A DNA stretch of 64,000 nucleotides, taken from the NCBI GenBank assembly GCA_002269645.1, contig NIVC01001230.1, forward strand, positions 125,539-189,538, written 5' to 3'. The first letter of the stretch is position 1. Each line of letters starts with the position of its first letter. Both the position numbers and the translations under genes were made by a program. The notes below the pieces were generated by a model. The model saw only the letters and a program-made list of their open reading frames with translations, had not been told where the DNA came from and did not search any database. This document shows, piece after piece, positions 3,491 through 51,189 of this stretch. The DNA comes from Macrostomum lignano. Lineage: Eukaryota.

Positions 3491-11610
<8,120 letters not shown>

Positions 11611-11619
11611 TTATCGTGA

Positions 11620-13352
11620 GTACACTGACTACAGACCATCAACACACTGACAACAGACCAACAACACACTGACTACAGACCAACAACACACTGACAACAG
11701 ACCGAAAACACACTGACTACAGACCAACAACACACTGATTACAGACTGCCAACACACTGACTACAGACCAACAACACACTGATTACAGACTGCCAACACA
11801 CTGACTACAGACCAACAACACACTGACTACAGATCAACAACACACTGATTACAGACTGCCAACACACTGACTACAGACCAACAACACACTGACTACAGAT
11901 CAACAACACACTGACTACAGATCAACAACACACTGACTACAGATCAACAACACACTGACTATAGATCAACAACACACTGACTACAGACCGAAAACACACT
12001 GACTACAGATCAACAACACACTGACTACAGATCAACAACACACTGACTACAGATCAACAACACACTGACTACAGATCAACAACACACTGACTACAGATCA
12101 ACAACACACTGACTACAGACCGAAAACACACTGATTACAGACCAACAACACACTGATTACAGACTGCCAACACACTGACTACAGACCAACAACACACTGA
12201 CTACAGATCAACAACACACTGATTACAGACTGCCAACACACTGACTACAGACCAACAACACACTGACTACAGATCAACAACACACTGACTACAGATCAAC
12301 AACACACTGACTACAGATCAACAACACACTGACTATAGATCAACAACACACTGACTACAGACCGAAAACACACTGACTACAGATCAACAACACACTGACT
12401 ACAGATCAACAACACACTGACTACAGATCAACAACACACTGACTACAGATCAACAACACACTGACTACAGATCAACAACACACTGACTACAGACCGAAAA
12501 CACACTGATTACAGACCAACAACACACTGACTACAGACCAACAACACACTGATTACAGACTGCCAACACACTGACTACAGATCAACAACACACTGACTAC
12601 AGATAAACAACACACTGACTACAGATCAACAACACACTGACTATAGATCAACAACACACTGACTACAGACCGAAAACACACTGACTACAGATCAACAACA
12701 CACTGACTACAGATCAACAACACACTGACTACAGATCAACAACACACTGACTACAGATCAACAACACACTGACTACAGATCAACAACACACTGACTACAG
12801 ATCAACAACACACTGACTACAGACCGAAAACACACTGATTACAGACCAACAACACACTGACTACAGACCAACAACACACTGATTACAGACCAACAACACA
12901 CTGACTACAGACCAACAACACACTGATTACAGACCAACAACACACTGATTACAGACCAACAACACACTGACTACAGACCAACAACACACTGATTACAGAC
13001 CAACAACACACTGACTACAGATCAACAACACACTGACTACAGATCAACAACACACTGACTACAGACCGAAAACACACTGATTACAGACCAACAACACACT
13101 GACTACAGACCAACAACACACTGATTACAGACCAACAACACACTGACTACAGACCAACAACACACTGATTACAGACCAACAACACACTGACTACAGACCA
13201 ACAACACACTGATTACAGACCAACAACACACTGACTACAGACCAACAACACACTGACTACAGATCAACAACACACTGACTACAGATCAACAACACACTGA
13301 CTACAGACCAACAACACACTGATTACAGACCAACAACACACTGATTACAGAC
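11620..13352. repeat. 22-bp minisatellite (ACACACTGACTACAGATCAACA)n starting just after the MARK stop codon
   Basis: About 78 units, with a 374-bp higher-order repeat. Confidence 0.95.
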
Positions 13353-16135: not shown

Positions 16136-19100
16136 ATGCAGGCGGAGGCTGAGCTGCTGCCAAATCAGCCGGCTCAGTCTAGTCGGCAGGAGCTACTGCT
16201 GCTGGCTGACGATGAGGCGCAGAGGCTGGATCGAGGAGAGGACGAAGAGCTCGACAGCGGCGACGACGATGGCGAGGAAGCTGGGAAAGCTGCCGATGAA
16301 GAATCGGACGAGGAGTCTGAACAGGAAGAAGAGGATGAGAAGTGCTTCACCCTGCTGCTGCCGCACAAGATGCAGATTGGAAAGCAGCAGCAGAAGGGCA
16401 GCAAGGGCGGCCCGTCTGCAGCTGCGGCGGTGAGCCTGACCGGCATGGCGTTCAGCTCCACGGTCGAGGCGCTGCTGGTCACCACTAAACTGTCTGGCAC
16501 TGGTGAGCTGCGGTCTGGGGGGACTGGGACTGGAGCTGCGCATCTGAGCACAGTTTATGCAGTCTTGAGAAGGGTGTCAGTTTCCCCAGAATGATGTCAG
16601 TTTCCTCAGAATGATGTCAGTTTCCTCAGAATGACGTCAGTCTCATCAGAATGATGTCAGTTTCTTCAGAATGGTGTCAGTTTCCTCAGAATAATGTCAG
16701 TCTCATCAGAATGATGTCAGTTTCCTCAGAATGGTGTCAGTTTCCTCAGAATAATGTCAGTTTCCTCAGAATGATGTCAGTCTCATCAGAATGATGTCAG
16801 TCTCATCAGAATGATGTCAGTTTCCTCAGAATGATGTCAGTTTCCTCAGAATGATGTCAGTTTCCTCAGAATGGTGTCAGTTTCCCCAGAATGATGTCAG
16901 TCTCATCAGAATGATGTCAGTTTCCTCAGAATGATGTCAGTTTCCTCAGAATGGTGTCAGTTACCTCAGAATGATGTCAGTTTCCTCAGAATGATGTCAG
17001 TTTCCTCAGAATGATGTCAGTCTCATCAGAATGATGTCAGTTTCCTCAGAATGATGTCAGTTTCCTCAGAATGATGTCAGTTTCCTCAGAATGATGTCAG
17101 TTTCCTCAGAATGATGTCAGTCTCATCAGAATGATGTCAGTTTCCTCAGAATGATGTCAGTCTCATCAGAATGATGTCAGTTTCCTCAGAATAATGTCAG
17201 TTTCCTCAGAATGATGTCAGTCTCATCAGAATGATGTCAGTCTCATCAGAATGATGTCAGTTTCCTCAGAATGGTGTCAGTTTCCTCAGAATGATGTCAG
17301 TTTCCTCAGAATGATGTCAGTTTCCTCAGAATGATGTCAGTTTCCTCAGAATGATGTCAGTCTCATCAGAATGATGTCAGTCATCAGAATGATGTCAGTT
17401 TCCTCAGAATGATGTCAGTTTCCTCAGAATGATGTCAGTTTCCTCAGAATGATGTCAGTTTCCTCAGAATGATGTCAGTTTCCTCAGAATGATGTCAGTT
17501 TCCTCAGAATGATGTCAGTTTCCTCAGAATGATGTCAGTTTCCTCAGAATGATGTCAGTTTCCTCAGAATGATGTCAGTCTCATCAGAATGATGTCAGTT
17601 TCCTCAGAATGGTGTCAGTTTCCTCAGAATGATGTCAGTTTCCTCAGAATGATGTCAGTCTCATCAGAATGATGTCAGTTTCCTCAGAATGATGTCAGTT
17701 TCCTCAGAATGATGTCAGTTTCCTCAGAATGATGTCAGTTTCCTCAGAATGATGTCAGTTTCCTCAGAATGATGTCAGTTTCCTCAGAATGATGTCAGTT
17801 TCCTCAGAATGATGTCAGTTTCCTCAGAATGATGTCAGTTTCCTCAGAATGATGTCAGTTTCCTCAGAATGATGTCAGTTTCTCAGAATGATGTCAGTTT
17901 CCTCAGAATGATGTCAGTTTCCTCAGAATGATGTCAGTTTCCTCAGAATGATGTCAGTTTCCTCAGAATGATGTCAGTTTCCTCAGAATGATGTCAGTTT
18001 CCTCAGAATGATGTCAGTTTCCTCAGAATGATGTCAGTTTCCTCAGAATGATGTCAGTCTCATCAGAATGATGTCAGTTTCCTCAGAATGATGTCAGTTT
18101 CCTCAGAATGATGTCAGTTTCCTCAGAATGATGTCAGTTTCCTCAGAATGATGTCAGTCTCATCAGAATGATGTCAGTTTCCTCAGAATGATGTCAGTTT
18201 CCTCAGAATGGTGTCAGTTTCCTCAGAATGATGTCAGTTTCCTCAGAATGATGTCAGTTTCCTCAGAATGATGTCAGTTTCCTCAGAATGATGTCAGTCT
18301 CATCAGAATGATGTCAGTTTCCTCAGAATGATGTCAGTTTCCTCAGAATGATGTCAGTTTCCTCAGAATGATGTCAGTTTCTCAGAATGATGTCAGTTTC
18401 CTCAGAATGATGTCAGTTTCCTCAGAATGATGTCAGTCTCATCAGAATGATGTCAGTTTCCTCAGAATGATGTCAGTTTCCTCAGAATGATGTCAGTTTC
18501 CTCAGAATGATGTCAGTTTCCTCAGAATGATGTCAGTTTCCTCAGAATGATGTCAGTTTCCTCAGAATGATGTCAGTTTCCTCAGAATGATGTCAGTTCC
18601 TCAGAATGATGTCAGTTTCCTCAGAATGATGTCAGTTTCCTCAGAATGATGTCAGTTTCCTCAGAATGATGTCAGTCTCATCAGAATGATGTCAGTTTCC
18701 TCAGAATGATGTCAGTTTCCTCAGAATGATGTCAGTCTCATCAGAATGATGTCAGTTTCCTCAGAATGATGTCAGTTTCCTCAGAATGATGTCAGTTTCC
18801 TCAGAATGATGTCAGTCTCATCAGAATGATGTCAGTTTCCTCAGAATGATGTCAGTCTCATCAGAATGATGTCAGTTTCCTCAGAATGATGTCAGTTTCC
18901 TCAGAATGATGTCAGTTTCCTCAGAATGATGTCAGTTTCCTCAGAATGATGTCAGTTTCCTCAGAATGATGTCAGTTTCCTCAGAATGATGTCAGTTTCC
19001 TCAGAATGATGTCAGTTTCCTCAGAATGATGTCAGTTTCCTCAGAATGATGTCAGTTTCCTCAGAATGGTGTCAGTTTCCTCAGAATAATGTCAGTTTCC

Positions 19101-22100
19101 TCAGAATAATGTCAGTTTCCTCAGAATGATGTCAGTCTCATCAGAATGATGTCAGTTTCCTCAGAATGATGTCAGTTTCCTCAGAATGATGTCAGTCTCA
19201 TATGAATGTTGTCAGTTTCCTCAGAATGGTGTCAGTTTCCTCAGAATGGTGTCAGTTTCCTCAGAATGATGTCAGTTTCCTCAGAATGGTGTCAGTTTCT
19301 CCAGAATAATGTCAGTTTCCTCAGAATGGTGTCAGTTTCCTCAGAATGATGTCAGTTTCCTCAGAATGATGTCAGTTTCCTCAGAATGACGTCAGTCTCA
19401 TCAGAATGATGTCAGTTTCTTCAGAATGGTGTCAGTTTCCTCAGAATAATGTCAGTCTCATCAGAATGATGTCAGTTTCCTTAGAATGGTGTCAGTTTCC
19501 TCAGAATGATGTCAGTTTCCTCAGAATGATGTCAGTCTTATCAGAATGATGTCAGTCTCATCAGAATGATGTCAGTTTCCTCAGAATGATGTCAGTTTCC
19601 TCAGAATGATGTCAGTTTCCTCAGAATGATGTCAGTCTCATCAGAATGATGTCAGTTTCCTCAGAATGGTGTCAGTTTCCTCAGAATAATGTCAGTTTCC
19701 TCAGAATGATGTCAGTTTCCTCAGAATGATGTCAGTCTCATCAGAATGATGTCAGTTTCCTCAGAATGATGTCAGTTTCCTCAGAATGGTGTCAGTTTCC
19801 TCAGAATGATGTCAGTTTCCTCAGAATGGTGTCAGTTTCTCCAGAATAATGTCAGTTTCCTCAGAATGATGTCAGTTTCCTCAGAATGATGTCAGTTTCC
19901 TCAGAATGATGTCAGTTTCCTCAGAATGATGTCAGTTTCCTCAGAATGATGTCAGTTTCCTCAGAATGGTGTCAGTTTCCTCAGAATGATGTCAGTTTCC
20001 TCAGAATGAAGAATCAGTTTCCTCAGAATGATGTCAGTCTCATCAGAATGATGTCAGTTTCCTCAGAATGGTGTCAGTTTCCTCAGAATAATGTCAGTTT
20101 CCTCAGAATGATGTCAGTTTCCTCAGAATGATGTCAGTTTCCTCAGAATGATGTCAGTTTCCTCAGAATGATGTCAGTTTCATCAGAATGATGTCAGTTT
20201 CCTCAGAATGATGTCAGTTTCCTCAGAATGATGTCAGTTTCCTCAGAATGATGTCAGTTTCCTCAGAATGATGTCAGTTTCCTCAGAATGATGTCAGTTT
20301 CCTCAGAATGGTGTCAGTTTCCTCAGAATGGTGTCAGTTTCCTCAGAATGATGTCAGTTTCCTCAGAATGGTGTCAGTTTCTCCAGAATAATGTCAGTTT
20401 CCTCAGAATGGTGTCAGTTTCCTCAGAATGATGTCAGTTTCCTCAGAATGATGTCAGTTTCCTCAGAATGACGTCAGTCTCATCAGAATGATGTCAGTTT
20501 CTTCAGAATGGTGTCAGTTTCCTCAGAATAATGTCAGTCTCATCAGAATGATGTCAGTTTCCTTAGAATGGTGTCAGTTTCCTCAGAATGATGTCAGTTT
20601 CCTCAGAATGATGTCAGTTTCCTCAGAATGACGTTAGTCTCATCAGAATGATGTCAGTTTCTTCAGAATGGTGTCAGTTTCCTCAGAATAATGTCAGTCT
20701 CATCAGAATGATGTCAGTTTCCTCAGAATGGTGTCAGTTTCCTCATCAGAATAATGTCAGTTTCCTCAGAATGATGTCAGTTTCATCAGAATGATGTCAG
20801 TCTCATCAGAATGATGTCAGTTTCCTCAGAATGATGTCAGTTTCCTCAGAATGATGTCAGTTTCCTCAGAATGGTGTCAGTTTCCTCAGAATGATGTCAG
20901 TTTCCTCAGAATGGTGTCAGTTTCTCCAGAATAATGTCAGTTTCCTCAGAATGATGTCAGTTTCCTCAGAATGATGTCAGTTTCCTCAGAATGATGTCAG
21001 TTTCCTCAGAATGATGTCAGTTTCCTCAGAATGATGTCAGTTTCCTCAGAATGGTGTCAGTTTCCTCAGAATGATGTCAGTTTCCTCAGAATGATGTCAG
21101 TTTCCTCAGAATGACGTCAGTCTCATCAGAATGATGTCAGTTTCTTCAGAATGGTGTCAGTTTCCTCAGAATAATGTCAGTCTCATCAGAATGATGTCAG
21201 TTTCCTCAGAATGGTGTCAGTTTCCTCAGAATAATGTCAGTTTCCTCAGAATGATGTCAGTCTCCTCAGAATGATGTCAGTCTCATCAGAATGATGTCAG
21301 TTTCCTCAGAATGATGTCAGTTTCCTCAGAATGATGTCAGTTTCCTCAGAATGATGTCAGTCTCATCAGAATGATGTCAGTTTCCTCAGAATGGTGTCAG
21401 TTTCCTCAGAATGGTGTCAGTTTCCTCAGAATGATGTCAGTTTCCTCAGAATGGTGTCAGTTTCTCCAGAATAATGTCAGTTTCCTCAGAATGGTGTCAG
21501 TTTCCTCAGAATGATGTCAGTTTCCTCAGAATGATGTCAGTTTCCTCAGAATGACGTCAGTCTCATCAGAATGATGTCAGTTTCTTCAGAATGGTGTCAG
21601 TTTCAGAATTGTCAGTCTCAGAATGATGTCAGTCTCATCAGAATGATGTCAGTTTCCTCAGAATGGTGTCAGTTTCCTCAGAATAATGTCAGTTTCCTCA
21701 GAATGATGTCAGTCTCATCAGAATGATGTCAGTCTCATCAGAATGATGTCAGTTTCCTCAGAATGATGTCAGTTTCCTCAGAATGATGTCAGTTTCCTCA
21801 GAATGATGTCAGTCTCATCAGAATGATGTCAGTTTCCTCAGAATGGTGTCAGTTTCCTCAGAATAATGTCAGTCTCATCAGAATGATGTCAGTCTCATCA
21901 GAATGATGTCAGTCTCATCAGAATGATGTCAGTCTCATCAGAATGATGTCAGTTTCCTCAGAATGATGTCAGTTTCCTCAGAATGATGTCAGTTTCCTCA
22001 GAATGATGTCAGTCTCATCAGAATGATGTCAGTTTCCTCAGAATGGTGTCAGTTTCCTCAGAATAATGTCAGTTTCCTCAGAATGATGTCAGTTTCCTCA

Positions 22101-23850
22101 GAATGATGTCAGTCTCATCAGAATGATGTCAGTTTCCTCAGAATGATGTCAGTTTCTCCAGAATAATGTCAGTTTCCTCAGAATGATGTCAGTCTACCAC
22201 AATCTACAAATCACGGACACCCATTGCGCCGCAGGCGGCCAGGAGGCCTACGCTGTGACGCAGCTGCACCCGACGACCTCCAGTTCGCGGCACCAGCAGC
22301 AGCAGCGCCACACCCGGCACTACCGGCCGGCCGGACTGGAGCACCGCGGCCCGCTCGGCCTGGCCAGCCGCGGCCGGGACGCCCCCGGCCAGCTGGTGTG
22401 CGCAGGCGCCGGCCCCGCCATTCACGGCGTCTTCCTGCTGCAGGCGCTGGCCGGGGCTGGCAGCCAGCCGGTGCTGTCCAGGTGCTGCGGCCCGCCGGGC
22501 TCCCGGCTCGGCCAGTTCAACCGGCCCGCCGGCTGCGCCGTGGACGCCGACAGCGTCTGGGTGGCCGACCAGCTCAACCACCGCCTGCAGCGGCTGGCGC
22601 TGCCCACCTTGGCGCCGCTGGCCGAACTGCGGCATCCGCGGCTGCTCCGGCCGAGTCACGTGACCGTGCTGGCCGATCCGCACTTTGCGGTGCGGCTGCT
22701 GCTGGTGGCGCACGAGCGCGGCGTGCTGGCATTCGACCTGCTGACGGCTCGGCACAGTGCTGACGGGTGCTGACTGATTTGCATGTACATGTAGCCTCTC
22801 AGTCTACCAGGCTTCTACCCTCTCAGTCTACCAGGCTTCTACCCTCTCAGTCTACCAGGCTTCTACCCTCTCAGTCTACCAGGCTTCTACCCTCTCAGTA
22901 TACCAGGCTTCTACCCTCTCAGTCTACCAGGCTTCTACCCTCTCAGTCTACCAGGCTTCTACCCTCTCAGTCTACCAGGCTTCTACCCTCTCAGTCTACC
23001 AGGCTTCTACCCTCTCAGTCTACCAGGCTTCTACCCTCTCAGTCTACCAGGCTTCTACCCTTTCAGTCTAGCAGCCACCTGTCAGTCTACCAGACTTCTA
23101 CCCTCTTAGTCTACCAGGTTAGGCTTCTACCCTCTCAGTCTACCAGGCTTCTACCCTCTCAGTCTACCAGGCTTCTACCCTCTCAGTCTACCAGGCTTCT
23201 ACCCTCTCAGTCTACCAGGCTTCTACCCTCTCAGTCTACCAGGCTTCTACCCTCTCAGTCTACCAGGCTTCCACCCTCTCAGTCTACCAGGCTTCTACCC
23301 TCTCAGTCTACCAGGCTTCTACCCTCTGTCCCTTAGGCTTCTACCCACTATGAGACGTGTACCGACGTGTATCGACGGACAATATAGAAATATGCACAAT
23401 AATATCCAACATGACAAATCACCCAGCCGCAAAAATCATTCGCAGACAACCACAACCAGCCCGCAGCCGTCGGCAGTCACGGAATTTGCCAGAAGCCGCT
23501 CGCCAATTCGCCGCTGGGGCGGCCTCTGCGTCCACTGGGGCGCCGTCCTGCTGGCAGACCAGGCGGCCAACTGCCTCAGTGTCTATCGCTACCGGCCTGC
23601 GGCCCCGCTGCCCGAGTCCAGCTGCCTGCCTCATCCTGCCGCCAGCTTCAGCCTGGTGCAGCGAATCCCTCTGGCTCCGCTGGGCCTGTGCCTGCCCAGA
23701 CACCTAGCCACTCACCGGTGGCTGGACCTGTTGTACCTGGCCGCTCACGATACCAGAGACAGCGGCGGCGAGATGTGCCTGCTCACCGCCCAGATGGTCC
23801 GCGTGCAGCAGAAGCAGCAACAATCTGATGTTGCAGAAGCTGATAAATGA
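16136..23850 (+). CDS. NHL-repeat (beta-propeller) protein with an acidic N-terminus, 3 exons, ~418 aa
   Basis: Exons 16136-16502 (G|GTGAGC, phase 1), 22235-22766 (CCGCAG| ... GG|GTGCTG, phase 2) and 23493-23850 (TTGCCAG|) total 1257 nt in one open frame. Contains the NHL-type motif GQFNRPAGCAVDADSVWVADQLNHRLQ. The true start may lie further upstream. Confidence 0.75.
16568..22192. repeat. 5.6-kb 20-bp satellite (TCAGTTTCCTCAGAATGATG)n filling intron 1 of the NHL gene
   Basis: About 280 units read directly. Confidence 0.97.
22793..23345. repeat. 24-bp minisatellite (CTCTCAGTCTACCAGGCTTCTACC)n in intron 2 of the NHL gene
   Basis: About 22 units read directly. Confidence 0.95.
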
Positions 23851-25068: not shown

Positions 25069-28000
25069 TCAATAATTTTGAAGACTGTTGGCCAGGGCCA
25101 GCCGAAGTGACACTCGGCGATTATTGCCGGAATTTTCCTTGTCCTCAGCCTTGACCCCCGGCTCGGCCTTGACCCCCCGATTGGCCTTGACCCCCGGCTC
25201 GGCCTTGACCTTGGCTTCGGCCCTGACCGCGGCAACCTTTTTCTTACGCCGAGAATTTTTCTCAGACAGCGGAGCCTTCGGCGTCTCGGGGGCCGGTCTG
25301 GGCGAGAGAGCAAGTAGAAATTCGAATGTAAAATGCGTTGCACACTACTGACTGATGTAAGAAAAAAGTAGAACTCGTAGAGCAAGGATGAATGACAATT
25401 GAGCATCGAAATTAATTCAGTCTTCTACCAATTAACCCGTCATGGAATCTTCCAACCTACCTTTTCGAGATGACCACTAAGTAATCTACCACAGAATCTA
25501 CCAATATATTCAATGCACCATAGAATCTACCAATTTACCATAGAATCTACCTATCTATCATAGAATCTACCAATCTACCATATATTCTACCAATCTAGCA
25601 AATAATCTACCTATCTACTATAGAATCTATCAATTTACCATAGAATCTACCAATTTACCATAGAATTTACCAATTTACCATAGAATCTACCAATTTACCA
25701 TAGAATCTACTAATTTACCATCGAATCTACTAATCTACCAATCTACCAATTTACAATAGAATCTATCAATTTACCATAGAATCTACCAATCTACCATAGA
25801 ATCTACCAATTTACCATAGAATCTACCAATCTACCATAGAATCTACCAATTTACCATTGTGGTAGCGTGGGTCTGCTCAATTGCTCCGCTTAGTGTAATG
25901 TACAGTGCAGGTGTACACCTGCACGCGCGCGTGTGATTGGCTGACGCTTTGTCAGACAACCTTTATTGTTGGCCAGCTATATTAAATACAAGCTCTCTGC
26001 CTTGGGGGGGTCTTACCCCCGAAGTGGAGTTTTCACAGTGGCGACGAGACTGAAACGATCCTGCGCAAATGAGTAGTGCAAGTGCACTAGGGCTTGTCGG
26101 CCCATACGAAGAAGGCTCTGAGCCGTGGCATATGTACCAAGCAAGGTTAAAACAATATTTTGTTGCCAATGACGTCACTGAGGAAGCGAAAAAGCGAGCG
26201 ATTCTGCTGAGTTCATGCGGCAAGAAAGTCTTCCATCTGGCCTTCAGTCTTCTGTCTCCTGCACAGCCATCAGCCAAGAGCTACACCGAAATTTGTGAGG
26301 CACTGAAGAGCCATTTCGAGCCTGAGGAGTCCGAGATCGTCCATCGTTACCGATTCTACACCAGAAATCGCAGGGAAGGTGAGGGCGTCGCTGACTTCGT
26401 CGCAGACCTCCGAGACCTGGCTCGCGACTGCAAGTTCGGCGACAGCCTGACTTCGATGCTTCGCGACAGGCTGGTGCTGGGAATCAACAACGACGGCGCT
26501 CAGCGGCGGCTGCTGGCGGAGCCCGATCTCACTCTAGCGAAGGCATTGAAGCTGGCCCTGGCCCACGAGTCCGCCGCCAAGGGCTGCCAGCTGGTGTCGG
26601 GAGCGAGTAAGCCAGATCCAGTCAGTCAGGAGTCCGTCAGCATTGTCAAGCAACAGCAGAAGTCATCTTCGACAAGGAGGTGCTTCAGGTGCCTGTCAAC
26701 GAAGCATCTCGCTAATAAGTGCCCGTTCGCCACCCAGAAGTGCTACAAGTGCTCAAAGACCGGCCACACTGCGGCTGCCTGCAAATCCCAGTCGAAGGAC
26801 GATAGAAGAGAGGCTCTGCAGATGCAGGACGGTGAGGAAAAAGACAGCTGCAAGGAGGAAACGGCCCACTCACTGTACCAGCTGTCCGGCAAGCGAGTGT
26901 CGAAGGTGCCGCCGATTACAACGACGGTGCGCATCAATGGCCGACCTGTTGTCATGGAAGTGGACACCGGAGCCTCCGTGTCCCTGGTATCCTCGAAGAC
27001 CTACAGGACCGTGCTCAACTCCCAGCCAGCACTGCAGCCTGCGTCCATGCAGCTGCGAACATACTCCGGTGAGAAAGTGCCAATCGAAGGCTGCATCTGC
27101 GTTGCTGTGGAAGCTGCTGAAGCACCGCCCAAGTCACTCAGCCTCCTTGTGGTCGCCGGCTGCGGATCCGACCTGCTCGGAAGAGACTGGCTGTCCGAGT
27201 TGCGGCTCGACTGGAGATCAATCAAGCAAATGGCGGCTGCTCCGGAGGTGTCGCCCAGACTGCAGCAGCTGCTCGACAAGTACAGCGATGTTTTTCGCCT
27301 GAGCTAGGAAAGTACAACGGACCACCAGTGAGTTTGAATATGAAACTCGATGCTCAACCTCGCTTTATGAAGGCCAGGAATCTCCCCTTTGCTGTGAAGG
27401 ACAAGGTGGAGAGCCAACTGAACCGCGAGATCGAACAAGGAATCCTGGTGCCTGTGCAGCACTCCGAGTACGCATCGCCGGTGGTGCCAGTGCTCAAGTC
27501 CGACGGCTCTGTGAGGGTCTGCGCCGACTTCAAGCAGACCGTCAACCCGAACGTGGAGCCCGACTCGTATCCTCTGCCGCGGATCGAAGAGCTGTTCGCG
27601 AAACTGACTGGTGGGCGGCTCTTCACTAAGCTCGATTTGTCGCAGGCGTACATGCAGCTGCCACTCGATGAGGCCTCCCAGGAAGTCTGCACGATCAATA
27701 CGCACAAAGGGCTGCTTCGGTACACGCGGCTGCCCTTCGGTGTCTCGCCAGCGGTCGGGATTTTTCAGCGCCGGATGGACTGCTTGCTGCAAGGAATCAC
27801 CAGCACCGCCTGCTTCATCGATGACCTCATCATCACCGGGAAGGACGACAGCAGTCATCTGAACTCCCTGGAGCAGGTTCTGGAGAAGCTGAGCCAGAGC
27901 GGCCTCCGGTGCAAGCTGGAGAAGTGCCAGTTCATGCAGACGAGCGTCAGTTATCTCGGTCACCGCATCGATGCCGACGGCCTGCACCCGATCAAAGACA

Positions 28001-31000
28001 AGGTCGAGGCGATTGTCAGCGCTCCAGCTCCCAAGGACGCAACTCAGCTGCGCAGCTTCCTAGGCATGGTGAACTACTATGGCAAGTTCCTGCCTAATTT
28101 GTCTCAAGTCCTGGCACCGCTGCACCTGCTGCTGCGCGAGCAACACCGCTGGAACTGGGGTGCTGCTCATAACGCCGCTTTCGAGAAGTGCAAGGCCCTG
28201 CTGTCTTCGGCTCCGGTATTGGCGCACTTCGACTTGAGCTGTCCGGAGCAGTCCGGCCTGTGGCCTTTGCCTCGCGTACGTTGCACGACGCTGAGAAAAA
28301 CTACTCGCAGCTCGAGAAGGAAGCCCTCGCTGTAGTGTTTGCGGTCAAGAAGTTCAACGCGTACCTGTTCGGCCGCCCATTTCTGCTGGTGAGTGACCAC
28401 AAACCTCTGCTTGGATTGCTTGCTGAGAACAAGGCCGTGCCGGCCCTGGCATCTGGAAGAATTCAGAGGTGGGCTCTGCTGCTGTCTGGCTATAACTACC
28501 GCATGGTTCACCGAGCCGGAGCCTCACTGCTGTGCGCCGATGCCCTGAGTCGCCTGCCGCTGCCCGACAAGCCGGCGACGGTCCCGAAGCTGGCAGAGCT
28601 GGTCATGCTGATGGACCACCTAGACGATGGACTTGTCACGGCAGCTCAGATACGCGGCCTGACTCGAAGGGACCCCACACTAGCCCGAGCTCTGCACTTC
28701 ACGCAAATCGGCTGGCCAGAGCGGGTCAGTGACGATCTGCTGCCATACTCCAAGAGAGCGGTTGAGCTCGGTGCGCAAGACGGCTGCCTCCTGTGGGGCG
28801 CTCGAGTGGTGGTCCCGGTCGGAGCGCGAGCTGCACTGCTCCAGGTGCTGCATCAAGGTCATGCGGGGGCGTCACGCATGAAGACGCTAGCCCGAGGTTA
28901 TTTCTGGTGGCCAGGATTAGACTCGGAGATTGAAAACCTGGCCAAGGCCTGCTCTGACTGTCAGGAGTTGCAGAACGCCCCGGCGCCTTCGCCAATGTTG
29001 TCGTGGCCGTGGCCTGACCGACCGTGGTCTCGAGTGCATATCGACTATGCGGGTCCGGTGTCTGGCAAGATGCTGCTGGTTGTCGTCGATGCCCATTCAA
29101 AGTGGCTGGATGTGCATGTGGTGACGTCAGCGACCTCAGCTGTCACCATCCAGAAACTCCGCTCCAGCTTCGCGACACACGGGTTGCCAGATGTGCTGGT
29201 GTCGGACAATGGGCCCAACTTGGTCAGCAAGGAGATGTCCGATTTTCTGCGGAGGAACGACATTCAGCACGTGCGCGTTGCTCCCTATCATCCGGCGTCC
29301 AACGGCCTGGCGGAACGAGCTGTCCAGACGCTGAAGCGGTCCCTGGAGAAGCAGCGCGAAGGCTCCTTGGAGGATAAGGTCGCCCGGTTCCTGCTGAGCT
29401 ACCGGGTCACTCCGAATGCGACAACTGGTGTGGCTCCCTGCGAACTCCTGATGGGACGGCGCCTGTGCACGTTGCTAGATCGAGCTCGGCCAGACATGGG
29501 AGCAAGAGTACAGCGTAAGCAAGGTCAGCAAAAAGAGCACCACGACTGCAAAGCTCGGTTCCGGACCTTCGAGACTGACGACGCTGTACTCGCCAGAGAC
29601 TTTGGAGCCAACGGAGGTCGGTGGAAGCCGGCGCGAGTTGTCGGTGCCGCCGGTCCAGCCTCCTACCTGTGCGGCTTCGATGGCGACGACCGAGTGGCGT
29701 TGACCATGTCCGCGGTGGTCCTGAGCAGCCGCGACCTACCGGAGCTGGCGTGACAGACGGTGCTACCGACGCCAAGGCCGCGCCTGAGCCGAAAGCTGCG
29801 ATGCCGGCCGTGGACGAGCCGCCAAACCTGGCTGCTCCTGGAGACCCTGAGATCGACGGGTCTCTGCGCCGATCGTCGTTTTGGTGCTGGTTAATTATTA
29901 TTTATTATTAAGTTATTAAGTTTCGAGTTATTGTTCCTCACTAAAATGTGTTGCTCTAATGTATTCTCTTGCGATCCCTGATCCCCATGTAGATGGGGAG
30001 GGATGTGGTAGCGTGGGTCTGCTCAATTGCTCCGCTTAGTGTAATGTACAGTGCAGGTGTACACCTGCACGCGCGCGTGTGATTGGCTGACGCTTTGTCA
30101 GACAACCTTTATTGTTGGCCAGCTATATTAAATACAAGCTCTCTGCCTTGGGGGGGGGGGGGGTCTTACCCCCGAAGTGGAGTTTTCACAACCATAGAAT
30201 CTACCAATCTACCATAGAATCTACCAATCTACCATAGAATCTATCAATTTACCATAGAATCTACCAATTTACCATAGAATCTATCAATTTACCATAGAAT
30301 CTACTAATTTACCATAGAATCTACCAATTTACCATAGAATCTACCAATCTATCATAGAATCTACCAATCTACCATAGAATCTACCAATCTACCATAGAAT
30401 CTACCAATTTACCATAGAATCTACCAATCTACCATAGAATCTACCAATCTACCATAGAATCTATCAATTTACCATAGAATCTACCAATTTACCATAGAAT
30501 CTACCAATTTACCATAGAATCTACCAATTTACCATAGAATCTACCAATTTACCATCGAATCTACTAATCTACCAATCTACCAATTTACAATAGAATCTAT
30601 CAATTTACCATAGAATCTACCAATCTACCATAGAATCTACCAATTTACCATAGAATCTACCAATCTACCATAGAATCTACCAATTTACCATAGAATCTAC
30701 CAATCTACCATAGAATCTACCAATCTACCATAGAATCTATCAATTTACCATAGAATCTACCAATTTACCATAGAATCTATCAATTTACCAAAGAATCTAC
30801 CAATCTACCAAAGAATCTACCTATCTACCATAGAATCTACCAATCTAGCATAGAATCTACTGCAGAATATACTAAAGATAAAAGCTACTCACTTTCTCTT
30901 AATCGGACAAAAGCTCTCGTCCAGCAGCACTGGATCTTCATCGTTCTTGCCAGCAGGAGTCGTCACCACGGCGCCGATGTCGCGCATCCACCAGGGCGGC

Positions 31001-31227
31001 GGCTCGTCGGCCATCAGTTTCGCTGCCGCGGCGCACGCATCGCCGCTAGACTGACGCGACCGACGGCCGGGCAGGCGGCGCAGCAGCTCCCGATCGCGCT
31101 GGCGTCCGCGCTTACAGGGCGGGGTGGCAGCGGCGTCAGCAGCTTTGGACAGGCCCAGCAGAGGAACGGGCAGGTTCAGACACGGCAGGTCGTCAAGAAG
31201 CTCCTGAAAGCCGAAGTTTTTGTTCAT
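25069..31227 (-). CDS. Uncharacterised basic protein, 2 exons, ~187 aa
   Basis: Exon 31227-30893 ends AGA AA|GTGAGT (phase 2). Exon 25297-25069 follows CTCTCGCCCAG| and reads KPAPETPKAPLSEKNSRRKKK...VKAEPGVKANRGVKAEPGVKAEDKENSG...NSLQNY*. Total 564 nt in frame. No family recognised. Confidence 0.65.
26069..27307 (+). CDS. Retrotransposon Gag (two CCHC zinc knuckles) plus aspartic protease
   Basis: YFVAND..., CFRCLSTKHLANKC, CYKCSKTGHTAAAC, protease motif VDTGASVS. Confidence 0.93.
   Translation: MSSASALGLVGPYEEGSEPWHMYQARLKQYFVANDVTEEAKKRAILLSSCGKKVFHLAFSLLSPAQPSAKSYTEICEALKSHFEPEESEIVHRYRFYTRNRREGEGVADFVADLRDLARDCKFGDSLTSMLRDRLVLGINNDGAQRRLLAEPDLTLAKALKLALAHESAAKGCQLVSGASKPDPVSQESVSIVKQQQKSSSTRRCFRCLSTKHLANKCPFATQKCYKCSKTGHTAAACKSQSKDDRREALQMQDGEEKDSCKEETAHSLYQLSGKRVSKVPPITTTVRINGRPVVMEVDTGASVSLVSSKTYRTVLNSQPALQPASMQLRTYSGEKVPIEGCICVAVEAAEAPPKSLSLLVVAGCGSDLLGRDWLSELRLDWRSIKQMAAAPEVSPRLQQLLDKYSDVFRLS
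27298..29900 (+). pseudogene. Retrotransposon Pol (RT, partly deleted RNase H, integrase), frameshifted
   Basis: RT motifs VRVCADFK, YPLP, LDLSQAY, LPFG, FIDD. RNase H end RPVAFASRTL...EKEALAV. Integrase zinc finger H..H...C..C, then HIDYAGP, SDNG, ERAVQ. Frame breaks near 27295, 28240 and 29695. Confidence 0.93.
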
Positions 31228-31284
31228 TGTATGTTTTGAGCATCTGCTGATCCTGAAGCAGCATCTTCCATTGATAATTCAATT

Positions 31285-32140
31285 GACACAGAATCTGCCA
31301 AATCTAACTGATACAGAATCTGCCAAATCTAACTGACACAGAATCTGCCAAATCTAACTGACACAGAATCTGCCAAATCTATAACTGTCACAAAATCTGC
31401 CGAATCCAACTGACACAGAATCTGCCGAATCCAACTGACACAGAATCTGCCAAATCTGACGCAGAATCTGCCAAATCTAACTGCTAAACTTGCTAATGTA
31501 GTTGAGACAGGAGTTTCCAAATTATTCAATAAAAAGCAATAAAATGGTTGCACTGGGCAAGCGGGTTTGCTTATCAGCGGTTATATTTACAATCAGCATT
31601 GACAATGGATAGAAAGTGAATTCTATTGTGCCATTTTCAACAGCTTAAAAATAATTTAGCCAAACAAAGAAACCACAAATTACTACCATATTAACTGCCT
31701 TTTTACTACCAAATCTGCCGTTTTTTTATTGACTCTACCAGCCTTACTACCGAATCTGCAATTTTTCTACAGATTGCGTTATTTGACACCCGAATCTGCC
31801 ACTTTTCTACCGAATCGACCAGCTTTACTACCGAATCTTCCAGTTTTACACCCGAATCTGCCTATTTTAATACCGATTTTGCCAACTTTACTGCCGAATC
31901 TGCCATTGTTCTACAGATTCTGTTAATTTGACACCCGAATCTGCTAATTATACTACTGAATCTGCCATTTTCTACAGAATCTACCAGCTTTACTACCGAA
32001 TCTTCCAGTTTTACACCCGAATCTGCCTATTTTACTACCGAATCTGCCATTTTTCTACATAATGTTAATTTGACACTCAAATCTGTTAACTTTACTGCCG
32101 AATCTGCCATTTTACTACCGAATCTACCATTTTCGCAAAT
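31285..32140. repeat. 25-bp repeat (CAGAATCTGCCAAATCTAACTGACA, 31285-31490) and a degenerate GAATCTGCC-core repeat (31715-32140)
   Basis: Both arrays read directly between FCF1 and the orphan gene. Confidence 0.85.
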
Positions 32141-32205
32141 TTCAATACCGAATTCAAAACTCAACGTGTCGCTCAACGGATCAATCAATCAGTCAATCAA
32201 GCAGT

Positions 32206-32807
32206 TCAACGCGGAGCGCCCAGCGCGTCCGGCATCCGCTCGACCGTGACCCGCCTGGCGTGCACGTACATGATGGGCACGCCGGGCACCCGGCGGAGTC
32301 GCCTGCGCAGGTCGCGATCGCAGGTGGCCACAATGTAGAATTTGTGATCGGTGACGCGGCGAACCAGACAGTCGTCAGCGTAAGTGCCCTTGTGCAGGCA
32401 GGACAGCCGGTGCACCGGGGATCGTGCAGAATCTTCAAGGCCACCCGGTACTTCTCGCCCATCTTCTCCATCTCGGCCAACACGCAGTCGGTGACGTACA
32501 GGACGCACTTGCCGTACAGGCAGTCCATGGCCGACTGAAACACGTCCAAGCGATTCTTAATAGCAAAGTTGACGTAGTTGGTGTCCAGCAGGATGTGATA
32601 GGGCGGCCCAATCTGGGTGTTGTAGTGCAGAAACATTGCGGAACTGACTGCGGTCTTGTGCCGAACAGGCAGCGGGTCGCTGTTGGTCTCGGCTGGCTTC
32701 CGCTTCTTGCCGGCCGGCTTGTCCCGGTCGCGCTTGCGGATCCGGCCATCGTTAAGGCTGATCATGCGCTTAACCGCGGCGAACCGCTTCGCCTGCTTGC
32801 GCTTGGA
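32206..32807 (-). CDS. FCF1: rRNA-processing PIN-domain endonuclease FCF1/UTP24
   Basis: SKRKQAKRFAAVKRMISLNDGR...YNTQIGPPYHILLDTNYVNF...KYRVALKILHDPR, then a 1-nt frameshift near 32415 into VHRLSCLHKGTYADDCLV...VATCDRDLRRRLRRVPGVPIMY...ERMPDALGAPR*. The exon starts after the acceptor CCCCTCAG| with no ATG. Confidence 0.95.
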
Positions 32808-32869
32808 CTGAGGGGGTTTGTTCGGTGCGGACAGGATAACCTTGGGTGTCTGATGGGTAGCGATTCCAC

Positions 32870-34138: not shown

Positions 34139-34325
34139 CAGTAGCGCAACCAGAAATTTTTCAAGGGGGGGCGGATTCTGAGGGTAAAGTCCCGGGAGGG
34201 GGGGGGCGGCGGAGGGGTGGCTCTGTTTTTGGCGAAAATTCGCTTGGTCCCCCCTTTGATTTTTTTTCGGTCCCCCGCCTAAGGGGGGGGCGACCGCCCC
34301 CCCGCCCCCCCTGGTTGCGCCACTG
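34139..34325. mobile_element. hAT-type MITE (187 bp)
   Basis: 15-bp TIRs CAGTAGCGCAACCAG / CTGGTTGCGCCACTG with one mismatch. Perfect 8-bp TSD GGCTATTA (34131-34138, 34326-34333). Confidence 0.88.
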
Positions 34326-34509
34326 GGCTATTAAATGCTAAAAAAAGGCAAATTTGAATATATAGTAAGCCTAGGTTTTCTACAATGAAAAAGCTTGCAA
34401 AATATCACTATTAATTTGAATAGGACCTATAACTATAAAATATTTATGTTTTTGTTTTGTTTTGTTTTTTTGTTTGGGAGATGCTTAGGCCTACTAGGCC
34501 TATCTGGCC

Positions 34510-36462: not shown

Positions 36463-38421
36463 CTAACTATATACGATTGAATCTGATTCGCTGCAGCGCT
36501 GCAGCTCCGCCACTGTGCCGCGAATGTGACGCACGCACGACTCCAAGCTCTTCGTTAGCGTGAGCAGCGACTGCGACATGGAGTCGATGATTTTCGCCTC
36601 CCGGCGCTCCCGCTGAGATGCGGTCGAATGGTCGATAAGAGGCTGCACAGATGGCTCTGCAAGACCGTCATTGCACTGATAGTCGCCTTCGCAGCAACAA
36701 GTTCTAAAGTTGCAGCTGCAATATTGAGTGTCGCAGGCACAGAACTCATCGCTGCAGTCGTTTTCTTCGAAGTTCGACTGGTTTCCGTCGAGTACCTGCG
36801 TGTTCTCAAGCTCAGACTCCTCGACATCTTCGTCTTCAATCTCTTCATTTCTGTCATTTTCGCTGCCAAGATCGCAGATTGCAGGGCATGTCTGAAAGCT
36901 GCACGCCTTGCTCTGCTGCCTCCGGCGACGTCGTCCACTACCCGTCCCTGGACAGGAGAAAGTTGCAGAGACAGCAGAGCCGCTGTACCGCAGTCTCGCC
37001 CTCTCCAGCGTCTGCAGAAGGTGGTCGAATCCGCCTCTTGCAATGGCCGTATGCAGTACGGCTGATTCGGTCTCTGCTGACTGAGTTGAGACCGCCGAAG
37101 CTGACGGTGAATCCAAGGGAGCTCGCCGACGCTGCCGCCATCTCTTGTCTCCACGTCGTTCTGGTGCTGAGTGCACATTTGAGTAGCCAACTGATGTGCA
37201 GCAGTCGCTGTCGCGAGTTCGATGTGATGAATGTGGATCAGATGCAGGCGGCCACTGAAGCTTCATTTGTTGACAGTCGGTAGTGCAGCCGCAGTCGCCA
37301 GTACTGGCTCCACTTGAGTAATGCAAAGCCGGACACAGGACCTCAGTGAGAGGTTCGCACTGTGGCTCGTTGCACTGTATGCGCCACTGCTCCATTCGCC
37401 AATCAGCTGACGCAGTCGGTTTCTCCCTGATGCAACGTGCAGTCATGGGGTGACATTGCAGCTTGTAAAATGCAGCCATCTGCCAGTCCGTCACAGTCTC
37501 GTCACAGTCGGAAAGCTCACAGTAGAAAAGTACTTTTTCTCGCCGAGAAACAGCTGGTTGTAGGTTAATTGACTCGCTTCTCGACTCTGCACAGCTTTAA
37601 TGACAGCTCTGTGGTTGCTGGTACAGCAGCTCCAGCTGAAGGTTGAATTCCTCCTTGAATTCTACGGCCAAGACAGGTGATGGGTCGTCAGAGACGCGGG
37701 ATGTAATTTGATGCTCGAGAGCATACCGAAAGCTGCGGTTGACGCGGCGTGTCATTGAACTGCACTTCTGCAGAATGTTTTGTTCACTCGATAGCCATTC
37801 GATGGCGTCTCCAGTCGGACAGTCAATGCAGCGAAGGTTGCAGGGACAGTCGAGATTCGACGGGACCAAGTACGACCTTGGCGATGGTAGCACCTGTGCC
37901 GGAGTTGAGCTACAAAACACGATGCACCAGTGCTTCCTCACTGTCTTGATTACTGGTCTGTCTGTCTCCACTGGCGTTGGCATAGGTGTGCAGGACTCGA
38001 GCAGCAAATTGTGAGATACTTCCCTAGCTGGAGTAACCGGCAGACTCCTGAGGAAAATACTCTCGAAGAAGCAGTGAGTCCTCCTGCTTGCAGTCGCTTT
38101 CTCGTTCAGTGACGATACAACTGAACTCTCTGAGCGAGGCCTTGAATCCACAGCTGACCGTGACCTGACAACCGCCTGCTGCAAGTCCGGGGTCAGGCAA
38201 ACTTCCGCAGTGATGACTCGAGTAAGCTTATAGGTCTTTCTGCTTCGATCTGGGGACCGTTTGCAGCTCAACGGGGTGTCAGCGTTGAAGGCGTCGACAG
38301 AGGAGCTTCCGTCATCCGGTGGAAGCCGGAAATGCGCATCGCCAGCGGCTGCACAGCGTCGAAAGTCGCACAGACTGGGCGATGATGCGGCTTCGCTGAT
38401 GCCTTCGCTGTTGAAGTACAT
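36463..38421 (-). pseudogene. Intronless Cys-rich orphan ORF, copy 1, with an in-frame TAA at 37597-37599
   Basis: ORFs 38421-37597 and 37494-36463 are in the same frame and nearly identical to the uninterrupted paralog at 54043-55971. Confidence 0.7.
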
Positions 38422-50725: not shown

Positions 50726-51189
50726 CAGTGTTGCGGTGTTGCATGAATAGGATTTTTGAATTAGGAAATGAGTAGCAACTCACTTTTTACCAAGCTCTTT
50801 TGCAATCTTCCAAGCTCTGAATATTTTCTCTAGAATTCCGCACAGTTCTGACGGTGATAAAAAAGTCTAGCTAGCTAGTTCGCAATTTCGCTCTCTATTC
50901 TTCCTTACTCAAGGATGTTTGAAAAAAATCACTCGGGATTCGCTACAGAGCTCCCTCCCATCTGGAATAAGCTCGCGTTTTCCTCTCACTGCGCTCTGCT
51001 CTCAGACTCTCATGGCGAGCGGTGTTGTGTGTGATTGAGGAGGCTTGCTTAGCCGCAAAATCGGAAGCTGAGTAATCCCTCCTCCTGATCTCGCCTCTTC
51101 CTCAGTTCCACCTCTCCCTCTCGCGTCTTTGAATTACAGAGCAGGCGGGAGGGGCGGCTGCTGCGGCCCGGGACCTCGGCAGTTCCCCC

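What the first reader, a model, noticed from the sequence alone, without database searches (positions are those of the whole stretch)
31190..32820. Candidate operon whose genes may take their start codon from the spliced leader
Seen: FCF1 begins at a phase-0 acceptor (CCCCTCAG|TCC AAG CGC, giving SKRKQAK..., which aligns with residue 2 onward of FCF1 orthologs) and has no ATG. About 1 kb past its stop, on the same strand, the orphan gene has a strong phase-0 acceptor (GGCTTTCAG|GAG CTT, exon from 31203), with only satellite DNA between. Established: flatworm spliced leaders end in AUG, which can serve as the initiator Met, and SL-resolved operons occur in flatworms. Inference: a dicistronic FCF1-orphan unit resolved by trans-splicing, with SL-donated methionines. 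The host taxon is itself inferred, and an ATG-only cis exon upstream of FCF1 is a real alternative.
Basis: partly seen in the sequence, partly recalled or inferred. Interest (0 to 1): 0.7.

Follow-up and report, generated by a model that had tools for sequence, protein, structure and literature searches.

The report
Flatworm genes started by spliced leader
Two neighbouring genes of the flatworm Macrostomum lignano (FCF1 and a species-specific gene) begin exactly at splice acceptors and most likely get their start codon from the trans-spliced leader. This mechanism is already documented in this species, so the finding is correct but ordinary, and the claim that the two genes form one operon remains unproven.

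Summary
On the minus strand, FCF1 starts at CAG|TCC (32807). It has no in-frame genomic ATG, and its first residue aligns with residue 2 of every orthologue. 1002 nt past the FCF1 stop, a gene found only in M. lignano starts at TTTCAG|GAG (31203). At two paralogous loci the public annotation starts both coding sequences, flagged 5'-partial, exactly at these acceptors. The published M. lignano spliced leader ends in ATG. SL-donated initiator codons have been known in flatworms since 2006. About 30% of M. lignano genes are reported as trans-spliced and about 15% as operonic.

The start-codon part of the reading is therefore well supported, though only indirectly. It has no direct support, because the two genes carry different transcriptional-unit names.

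This copy of FCF1 has a 1-nt frameshift at 32417/32418. An in-frame ATG lies 24 nt upstream of the second acceptor. The second gene has a second exon (25297-25069) behind an intron that holds a young 4.3-kb LTR retrotransposon. Only 64% of the spacer is satellite DNA. Interest is low.

The parts
32808..32816 (-). FCF1 3' splice (trans-splice) acceptor, cccccTCAG, with AG at 32809-32808
   Evidence: Sequence. The annotated CDS of paralogues L001 and L002 and of the window copy starts at the next base.
32206..32807 (-). FCF1 (Utp24, PIN-domain rRNA-processing nuclease) single coding exon. It has no ATG and its first codon is TCC (Ser, residue 2). The stop TGA is at 32208-32206. This copy carries a 1-nt deletion between 32417 and 32418, which shifts the frame after codon 130.
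   Evidence: (Pfam Fcf1, 3.6e-31).
31204..32205 (-). Spacer of 1002 nt between the FCF1 stop and the next acceptor. It contains a 21-nt-unit satellite at 31701-32133, a non-repeat island at 31484-31700, a 25-nt-unit satellite at 31276-31483, and the only canonical AATAAA at 31730-31725.
   Evidence: The same layout occurs at L001 (1470 nt) and L002 (1595 nt). The length differences lie in the second satellite.
31225..31227 (-). In-frame genomic ATG 24 nt upstream of the second acceptor (MNKNFGFQ|ELL...), conserved in all three loci. It lies in the outron if the acceptor is trans-spliced.
31204..31209 (-). Acceptor TTTCAG of the downstream gene. It matches the published trans-acceptor motif [T/C]TNCAG.
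   Evidence: The annotated CDS at L001 and L002 starts at the next base.
30893..31203 (-). Exon 1 of the M. lignano-only gene (Mlig003976 family). It is 311 nt, starts in phase 0 with GAG (ELLDDLPC...), and its donor is AAA|GTGAGT at 30892.
   Evidence: GC 0.66; no stops in frame 0, versus 3 and 6 stops in the other frames.
25298..30892 (-). Intron of 5595 nt (696 nt at the paralogous loci). It contains a 20-nt-unit satellite at 30191-30860 and 25457-25857, interrupted by the retrotransposon.
25858..30190 (+). Ty3/gypsy-type LTR retrotransposon of 4333 nt, antisense to the host gene. Its LTRs (25858-26037 and 30004-30190) are identical except for poly-G length. It has a 5-bp target-site duplication, ACCAT, and is absent from the paralogous loci.
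25069..25297 (-). Exon 2 of the downstream gene, with acceptor cgcccAG|ACC and stop TGA at 25071-25069. The spliced product is 179 aa and is identical to UniProt A0A1I8IP18 minus its first two residues.

Best explanation
This is a locus of Macrostomum lignano that is already annotated in public records. It holds two adjacent minus-strand genes whose mature mRNAs are made by spliced-leader trans-splicing.

The 35-nt SL, which ends in AUG, is joined at CAG|UCC (32807). This gives AUG-UCC-AAG... = M-S-K-R-K..., so the SL supplies the FCF1 initiator codon that the genome lacks. A second SL is joined at UUUCAG|GAG (31203), giving M-E-L-L-D-D... for a two-exon, M. lignano-only gene of 179-191 aa. 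That gene has lysine-rich VKAEPG repeats and a KEN motif.

The two genes are probably transcribed from one promoter upstream of FCF1 as a dicistronic precursor that runs through a spacer of 1.0-1.6 kb, about two-thirds of it satellite. The precursor would be resolved by 3'-end formation of FCF1 and SL addition to the second gene.

My probabilities for each step:
- SL addition and SL-AUG initiation for FCF1: about 0.85.
- SL addition to the second gene: about 0.8, with about 0.7 that the SL AUG is used as its initiator.
- Co-transcription (a true operon): about 0.5.

What is shown directly: the acceptors, their phase, the missing ATG, the homology from residue 2, the annotated 5' ends, and the repeat-adjusted distance. 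What is inferred: the SL junctions themselves, translation from the SL AUG, and co-transcription.

The copy in this window looks degraded, with a frameshift in FCF1 and a retrotransposon in the second gene's intron. The intact arrangement is seen at the two paralogous loci.
For: - Host and annotation. FCF1 is 99% identical to M. lignano BOX15_Mlig020726g3 and Mlig032850g1. Both are 200 aa, flagged 'partial', and start at SKRK. The window's own model starts at the same base.
- Second gene. Its annotated models at L001 and L002 (BOX15_Mlig003976g2 and g1, both 'partial') start at the base after TTTCAG. Because the FCF1 frame stays open for 290 nt upstream, and because an in-frame ATG lies 24 nt upstream of the second gene, these 5'-partial ORFs imply transcript 5' ends within 2 nt of the AG.
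- Annotation method. The pipeline sets such ends from SL-containing reads.
- Spliced leader. The SL ends in ATG. A paper on Macrostomum genomes notes this ATG as the probable start codon. Flatworm SL AUG initiation is established by Cheng et al. 2006, as cited.
- N-terminus. Residues 2-14 of FCF1 keep the invariant K2, A10, K13 and R14 of the orthologues, so they are translated.
- No cis alternative. There are no good ATG|GTRAG donors in the 4.2 kb upstream.
- Operon criterion. The genes are on the same strand with no intervening gene. The non-repeat spacer is 360, 418 and 410 nt at the three loci, against the published 1-kb repeat-adjusted threshold. The same paper notes that repeats inflate intercistronic distances.
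- Coding signs in the second gene. Exon GC is 0.60-0.66 against 0.38 in the spacer. Exon 1 has no stop in frame 0, and both of its differences among the three copies are third-position changes.
Against: - No RNA data could be inspected here. The SL junctions are inferred from annotation boundaries.
- FCF1 and the second gene have different transcriptional-unit prefixes. Genes cut from one annotated unit share a prefix. So no assembled precursor spans the spacer, although the authors warn that units break in repeat-rich intercistronic regions.
- The raw spacer (1.0-1.6 kb) is far above the roughly 100-bp mode for operons, and the 217-267-nt non-repeat island could hold a promoter.
- The FCF1 acceptor misses the consensus at position -5.
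- The second gene has its own in-frame ATG 24 nt upstream.
- In this window, FCF1 is frameshifted and no gene is called for the second gene.
Confidence: 0.55

Rival explanations
1. The two genes are independent and monocistronic. Both are SL trans-spliced, but the second has its own promoter in the spacer, for example in the non-repeat island at 31484-31700. Its outron is removed by SL addition, and there is no polycistronic precursor.
For: About 60% of trans-spliced M. lignano genes are not assigned to operons. The transcriptional-unit prefixes differ. The raw spacer is 1.0-1.6 kb. A canonical AATAAA at 31730 leaves about 500 nt before the next acceptor.
Against: The repeat-adjusted distance of 360-418 nt falls in the operon mode of the published bimodal distribution. 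The annotated units are known to fragment at repeats.
Confidence: 0.38
2. FCF1 gets its ATG from a short cis-spliced upstream exon, rather than from the SL.
For: An acceptor alone cannot distinguish cis-splicing from trans-splicing. Parasitic flatworms share acceptors between the two modes.
Against: Only two ATG|GT sites occur in the 4.2 kb upstream (33620 and 35931), and neither has the GT[G/A]AG donor consensus. Genome-guided transcript models at three loci stop at the acceptor and are flagged 5'-partial instead of including an upstream exon.
Confidence: 0.05
3. The pair in this window is a decaying duplicate. FCF1 here is a pseudogene with a real frameshift, and the second gene is silenced or impaired by the retrotransposon. 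On this view, whatever operon exists works only at the paralogous loci.
For: There is a 1-nt deletion plus an adjacent non-synonymous change in FCF1. The frameshift removes the C-terminal half of the PIN domain. A 4.3-kb element with near-identical LTRs sits in the intron. No gene model exists for the second gene at this locus. The sequenced DV1 line carries duplicated chromosome sequence.
Against: The assembly is PacBio/Canu polished with Pilon, which works poorly where paralogues are near-identical. Another paralogue shows a homopolymer indel in the other gene, which suggests residual assembly errors. The second gene's exons are intact here and encode a protein identical to a UniProt entry. 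This reading concerns the state of this copy and is compatible with either transcription model.
Confidence: 0.4
4. The second gene starts at its own genomic ATG (31227) on a transcript that is not trans-spliced, giving MNKNFGFQELL...
For: The ATG is in frame with no stop before the acceptor, and it is conserved at all three loci.
Against: The annotated models at two loci start at the acceptor as 5'-partial CDSs, not at this ATG. An in-frame ATG within 8 codons is expected by chance roughly one time in eight (my estimate). The three loci are recent duplicates, so conservation among them carries little weight.
Confidence: 0.1

Closest known systems
SL-AUG-dependent mRNAs of flatworms (Cheng et al. 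2006, J Biol Chem 281:733, Schistosoma mansoni; called 'slORFs' in PMC9851317)
   Same: The SL ends in AUG. The acceptor is in phase 0 with the ORF. The genomic ORF lacks an initiator, and homology to orthologues starts at residue 2.
   Different: The species is a free-living macrostomorph. Use of the SL AUG is inferred here from annotation and conservation, not shown by cDNA or translation assays.
Macrostomum lignano SL-resolved operons (Wudarski et al. 2017, PMC5730564; Ustyantsev and Berezikov 2021, PMC8629364), for example transcriptional unit Mlig030697 with genes g1 and g2
   Same: The genes are adjacent on the same strand and both are trans-spliced. The spacer is inflated by repeats, with a repeat-adjusted distance below 1 kb. 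Two-gene operons are the commonest class (75%). The first gene is a conserved housekeeping gene.
   Different: In the published example both genes were cut from one assembled precursor and share a prefix. Here the two genes carry different prefixes, so no precursor is documented.
Caenorhabditis elegans operons
   Same: A polycistronic precursor is resolved by 3'-end formation plus SL addition to the downstream gene.
   Different: C. elegans uses a specialised SL2 and spacers of about 100 nt, and its SLs do not end in AUG. M. lignano has a single SL, and this spacer is 1.0-1.6 kb of mostly satellite DNA.
FCF1/Utp24 PIN-domain nuclease of the small-subunit processome
   Same: 61-65% identity to metazoan orthologues over the full length, with Pfam Fcf1 and PIN_9 domains.
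   Different: The gene is intronless and lacks a genomic ATG. The window copy is frameshifted at codon 131.

Membership tests
Flatworm mRNA initiated at the SL 3'-terminal AUG | The host's spliced leader ends in AUG | tested here: met
   The host is identified as M. lignano. The published SL...TTATTGCATG, is given. No SL RNA gene lies in the window itself.
Flatworm mRNA initiated at the SL 3'-terminal AUG | An AG acceptor lies immediately 5' of the ORF, in phase 0 | tested here: met
   CAG|TCC at 32807 and TTTCAG|GAG at 31203. The ORFs read in phase 0 from the first exon base.
Flatworm mRNA initiated at the SL 3'-terminal AUG | No usable genomic initiator, with homology to orthologues starting at residue 2 | tested here: met
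   Met for FCF1: no in-frame ATG back to the stop at 33098, and S aligns with residue 2. Not strictly met for the second gene, which has an in-frame ATG 24 nt upstream in the presumed outron and no orthologues to align.
Flatworm mRNA initiated at the SL 3'-terminal AUG | cDNA or reads carrying the SL joined at the acceptor | not testable with these tools
   Only indirect evidence is available. SL-read-guided annotation places 5'-partial CDS starts at both acceptors at two or three loci.
Flatworm mRNA initiated at the SL 3'-terminal AUG | The protein N-terminus begins with the SL-encoded Met | not testable with these tools
   This needs N-terminal proteomics or ribosome profiling.
SL-resolved operon (M. 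lignano operational definition, PMC8629364) | Adjacent genes on the same strand with no opposite-strand gene between them | tested here: met
   Gene tables of L001, L002 and L003.
SL-resolved operon (M. lignano operational definition, PMC8629364) | The downstream gene is SL trans-spliced | tested here: inconclusive
   Inferred from the annotated 5' end at TTTCAG|. No reads were seen.
SL-resolved operon (M. lignano operational definition, PMC8629364) | Intergenic distance below 1 kb after subtracting repeats | tested here: met
   360, 418 and 410 nt of non-tandem-repeat sequence, measured from the stop codon to the acceptor. The 3' UTR is not subtracted and a RepeatMasker track was not available, so the true value is the same or smaller.
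SL-resolved operon (biological definition) | One primary transcript spans both genes, with no internal transcription start | not testable with these tools
   The different transcriptional-unit prefixes argue against an assembled precursor. An old ML2 gene model, A0A1I8FJ92, fuses the two genes, but it is a frame-hopping chimera that also runs into the next locus.
FCF1/Utp24 | Full-length Fcf1/PIN domain in one reading frame | tested here: not met
   Not met in the window copy, where a 1-nt deletion at 32417/32418 shifts the frame after residue 130. Met in the paralogues P0001 and P0002. With an X placed at the shift, Pfam Fcf1 scores E=3.6e-31.

The most novel reading that the evidence does not exclude
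The FCF1-Mlig003976 pair is a genuine dicistronic unit whose precursor is transcribed through 0.6-1.2 kb of fast-evolving satellite. The 25-nt array varies from 8 to 32 copies between paralogous loci. On this reading, satellite copy number in an intercistronic spacer tunes expression of the downstream cistron, and it couples a universal ribosome-biogenesis nuclease to a lineage-specific, possibly cell-cycle-regulated, KEN-motif protein.
Probability: 0.1. Interest if true: 0.4.

Novelty: new member of a known kind. Interest (0 to 1): 0.15.

Why it matters
The finding has mainly practical value. It shows that ATG-less, '5'-partial' gene models in Macrostomum, such as FCF1, are complete genes whose Met is supplied by the spliced leader. 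Annotators and orthology pipelines should add that Met rather than treat the models as truncated.

It also illustrates that intercistronic spacers in this species can be swollen by satellites, so raw distance is a poor test for operons.

It does not open a new question. SL-AUG initiation (2006), genome-wide trans-splice mapping (2017) and operon prediction in M. lignano (2021) are all published.

Tried and rejected
- SL RNA gene or SL sequence in the window: none found with up to 3 mismatches. No Rfam family matched.
- Per-gene evidence in paper supplements (Mlig020726, Mlig032850, Mlig003976, FCF1): no occurrences.
- Function of the second gene. Pfam gave nothing. An exhaustive phmmer search of 1.84 billion representatives gave only M. 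lignano entries plus low-complexity VKAEPG-type matches. It stays an orphan. The UniProt label 'BLVR domain' was not reproduced.
- Using gene names as proof of a shared precursor: the prefixes differ, so this gave no support.
- The ML2 fused gene model A0A1I8FJ92 as evidence of co-transcription: rejected as proof. tblastn shows that it hops frames and runs on into the next locus.
- A three-gene operon including the upstream gene (Mlig011834 family): rejected for now. Its stop lies 3.3-3.8 kb from the FCF1 acceptor, and only about 0.5-0.6 kb of that is tandem repeat.
- FCF1 as a retrocopy of an SL-bearing mRNA: rejected. The sequence upstream of 32807 is not the SL.
- A cis-spliced exon ending in ATG: no credible donor in 4.2 kb.
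- A transcript-derived protein starting MSKRK... in the protein collection: none appeared among the FCF1 hits above 65% identity.
Full report
WHAT IS THERE

The features of the finding lie on the minus strand. A 602-nt GC-rich block (32807-32206, GC 0.62, third-position GC 0.85) encodes FCF1/Utp24. Pfam Fcf1 matches at E=3.6e-31, and identity to metazoan orthologues is 61-65%.

The block starts at ...aaaccccctcAG|TCC AAG CGC, with the exon beginning at 32807. In a 10-sequence alignment the first residue, S, falls in column 2, directly after the initiator Met of every orthologue. The invariant K2, A10, K13 and R14 are kept. Reading upstream in the same frame, there is no ATG before the first stop at 33098.

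The FCF1 stop (TGA, 32208-32206) is followed by a 1002-nt AT-rich spacer (GC 0.38) and then ggcTTTCAG|GAG CTT, with the exon starting at 31203. The second observation is also correct.

WHOSE GENOME, AND WHAT IS ALREADY ON RECORD

The best protein hits are two Macrostomum lignano entries of 200 aa at 99% identity. Both are flagged 'partial' and both start with SKRKQAK. The window's own model maps to contig NIVC01001230.1 of assembly GCA_002269645.1, which is Mlig_3_7. Two paralogous loci were fetched as L001 and L002.

At both paralogous loci the annotated FCF1 CDS begins at the base after CAG. A second gene (BOX15_Mlig003976g2 and g1, also 'partial') begins at the base after TTTCAG.

These boundaries carry information. 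The FCF1 frame is open for 290 nt upstream, and an in-frame ATG lies 24 nt upstream of the second acceptor. A 5'-partial ORF that begins exactly at the acceptor therefore implies a transcript model that ends within 2 nt of the AG. The annotation pipeline (TBONE) sets such 5' ends from peaks of RNA-seq reads that carried the spliced leader.

The M. lignano SL is a single 35-nt sequence, CGGTCTCTTACTGCGAAGACTCAATTTATTGCATG. Joined in phase 0, it gives ATG|TCC... = MSKRK... and ATG|GAG... = MELLDD....

The background is published. The SL's terminal AUG can serve as initiator in flatworms (Cheng et al. 2006, as cited). That study reported it in frame with 28% of trans-spliced S. mansoni transcripts and required by more than 40 cDNAs. 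A paper on Macrostomum genomes notes the SL's final ATG as the likely start codon.

THE SECOND GENE

It has two exons. In the window these are 31203-30893 (donor AAA|GTGAGT) and 25297-25069 (acceptor cgcccAG|ACC, stop TGA). They give a 179-aa product identical to UniProt A0A1I8IP18 minus its first two residues.

Several signs point to a coding gene:
- Exon GC is 0.60-0.66.
- Exon 1 has no stop in frame 0, against 3 and 6 stops in the other frames.
- The only two differences in exon 1 among the three copies are at third codon positions.
- A 36-nt in-frame length difference lies in the VKAEPG repeat region.

There is no Pfam match. Outside M. lignano, a search of 1.84 billion representative proteins found only weak matches (E 1e-5 to 5e-4), mostly to the lysine-rich VKAEPG repeat region. 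'Orphan' is therefore a fair description. The protein contains a KEN motif near its C-terminus. I read this only as a hint of regulated turnover.

(1) The FCF1 copy in this window is frameshifted. Relative to both paralogues, one G is missing between 32417 and 32418 (CGGGTG to CGGTG, codon 131), and there is an adjacent R133H change. The annotated product (P0003, 204 aa) runs out of frame for its last 74 residues.

This may be a real pseudogenising mutation, or it may be a residual error of a PacBio/Canu assembly that Pilon polishes poorly where paralogues are near-identical. L002 carries a comparable 1-nt loss in a G6 run of the other gene.

(2) An in-frame ATG (31227-31225) lies 24 nt upstream of the second acceptor at all three loci. 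The second gene is therefore not strictly dependent on the SL AUG, although the annotation does not use this ATG.

(3) The spacer is not 'only satellite'. 641 of 1002 nt are tandem repeats: a 21-nt unit at 31701-32133 and a 25-nt unit at 31276-31483. The other 360 nt are not tandem repeats. They include a 217-nt island at 31484-31700. The only canonical AATAAA (31730-31725) lies just upstream of the island, at the proximal edge of the first satellite.

(4) In the window, the second gene's intron is 5595 nt instead of 696 nt. A 4333-nt Ty3/gypsy-type LTR retrotransposon (25858-30190, plus strand) has inserted into the intron's 20-nt satellite. Its LTRs are identical except for poly-G length, and it is flanked by the target-site duplication ACCAT. 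No gene is called for the second gene at this locus.

OPERON OR NOT

The published genome-wide study defines M. lignano operons as adjacent same-strand genes, with the downstream one trans-spliced, that are less than 1 kb apart after subtracting repeats. It notes that repeats inflate intercistronic distances. It assigns about 15% of genes to operons, 75% of which are two-gene operons.

All three loci share one spacer layout: 71 nt, then satellite A, then a 217-267-nt island, then satellite B, then 72-80 nt. Total lengths are 1002, 1470 and 1595 nt, and non-repeat content is 360, 418 and 410 nt. The length differences lie in satellite B, which has 8 to about 32 copies. By the published criterion the pair qualifies.

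Against this, the two genes carry different transcriptional-unit prefixes: Mlig020726 or Mlig032850 for FCF1, and Mlig003976 for the second gene. Genes cut from one assembled precursor share a prefix. No precursor is therefore on record, though the authors caution that units break in repeat-rich spacers.

An older gene model, A0A1I8FJ92, joins the FCF1 3' end (donor CGC|GTTGAA at the stop codon) to the same TTTCAG acceptor. It is a frame-hopping chimera that runs on into the next locus, so it proves nothing.

The upstream same-strand gene (Mlig011834 family) is 3.3-3.8 kb away, and only about 0.5-0.6 kb of that distance is tandem repeat. FCF1 is therefore probably the first gene of any operon here.

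I put co-transcription at about 0.5. The main rival, two independently transcribed genes that are each trans-spliced, is at about 0.38.

OTHER ALTERNATIVES

A cis-spliced exon ending in ATG for FCF1 is unlikely (about 0.05). Only two ATG|GT sites occur in the 4.2 kb upstream, neither has the GT[G/A]AG consensus, and none of the transcript models includes such an exon.

A retrocopy origin with a genomic SL is excluded, because the sequence upstream of 32807 is not the SL.

VERDICT

The operon is plausible by the field's operational rule but unproven. The mechanism, the species-wide maps and the annotation of this very locus are already public. This is a new, unremarkable member of a known kind, and interest is low.

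No step had to be referred. The retrotransposon was located by its ends and domains only and was not printed or reconstructed.

Noticed in passing
window 25858-30190 (+): A young Ty3/gypsy-type LTR retrotransposon lies here. Its gag/protease, RT and RNaseH-integrase ORFs are in three pieces at 26069-29750. Its LTRs are identical except for G7 versus G14, and it has the target-site duplication ACCAT. It inserted into the 20-nt satellite of the second gene's intron and is absent from both paralogous loci.
   Followed up: partly
window 32417/32418 and 32411 (-): FCF1 in this copy has a 1-nt deletion (GGG to GG) plus an R133H change relative to both paralogues. It is either a pseudogene or a residual long-read assembly error. 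L002 shows a similar 1-nt loss in a G6 run of the second gene's exon 2 (L002 about 13325).
   Followed up: partly
window 31225-31227 (-); L001 12050-12052; L002 12175-12177: An in-frame ATG lies 24 nt upstream of the second gene's acceptor and is conserved at all three loci. It could serve as a back-up initiator on transcripts that are not trans-spliced, or it could be chance.
   Followed up: partly
UniProt A0A1I8FJ92 (P0129), mapped on L001 10280-10613, 12074-12307, 13072-13336 and 14695-15057: An older ML2-assembly gene model fuses the FCF1 C-terminal half, the orphan gene and part of the next locus. Its FCF1-orphan junction uses a GT at the FCF1 stop codon and the same TTTCAG acceptor.
   Followed up: yes
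window 54043-56022 (-) and 36463-37479 (-): The window holds two copies of the upstream gene (Mlig011834 family, no Pfam domain). One encodes 654 aa and the other is annotated as 338 aa only. Their models are also 5'-partial, with differing first residues.
   Followed up: no
window 16575-22193, and many other arrays: The window is packed with minisatellites of 15-40-nt units. They include a 5.6-kb array of a 20-mer (281 copies) that spans only about 0.7 kb at locus L001. Other arrays lie at 3807-5268, 11622-13352 and 48370-50727.
   Followed up: no
window 30191-30860, 31276-31483 and 31701-32133 (-): The two spacer satellites and the intron satellite share a core on the transcribed strand, GGCAGATTC or GGTAGATTC, although their unit lengths differ (25, 21 and 20 nt). 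This suggests a common origin or a shared constraint.
   Followed up: no
window 51645-52880 (+) and 59619-61148 (+): Large exons encode cadherin repeats (Pfam Cadherin, 1e-34, and the FAT4-like N-terminal domain). They probably belong to a protocadherin or FAT-like gene.
   Followed up: no
window 34150-34330 (-): An unusual stretch is rich in G and C homopolymers (ggggggcggggggcggtcgcccccccc...ccgccgcccccccccc) and lies within AT-rich DNA upstream of FCF1. It may be a fragment of a repeat element.
   Followed up: no
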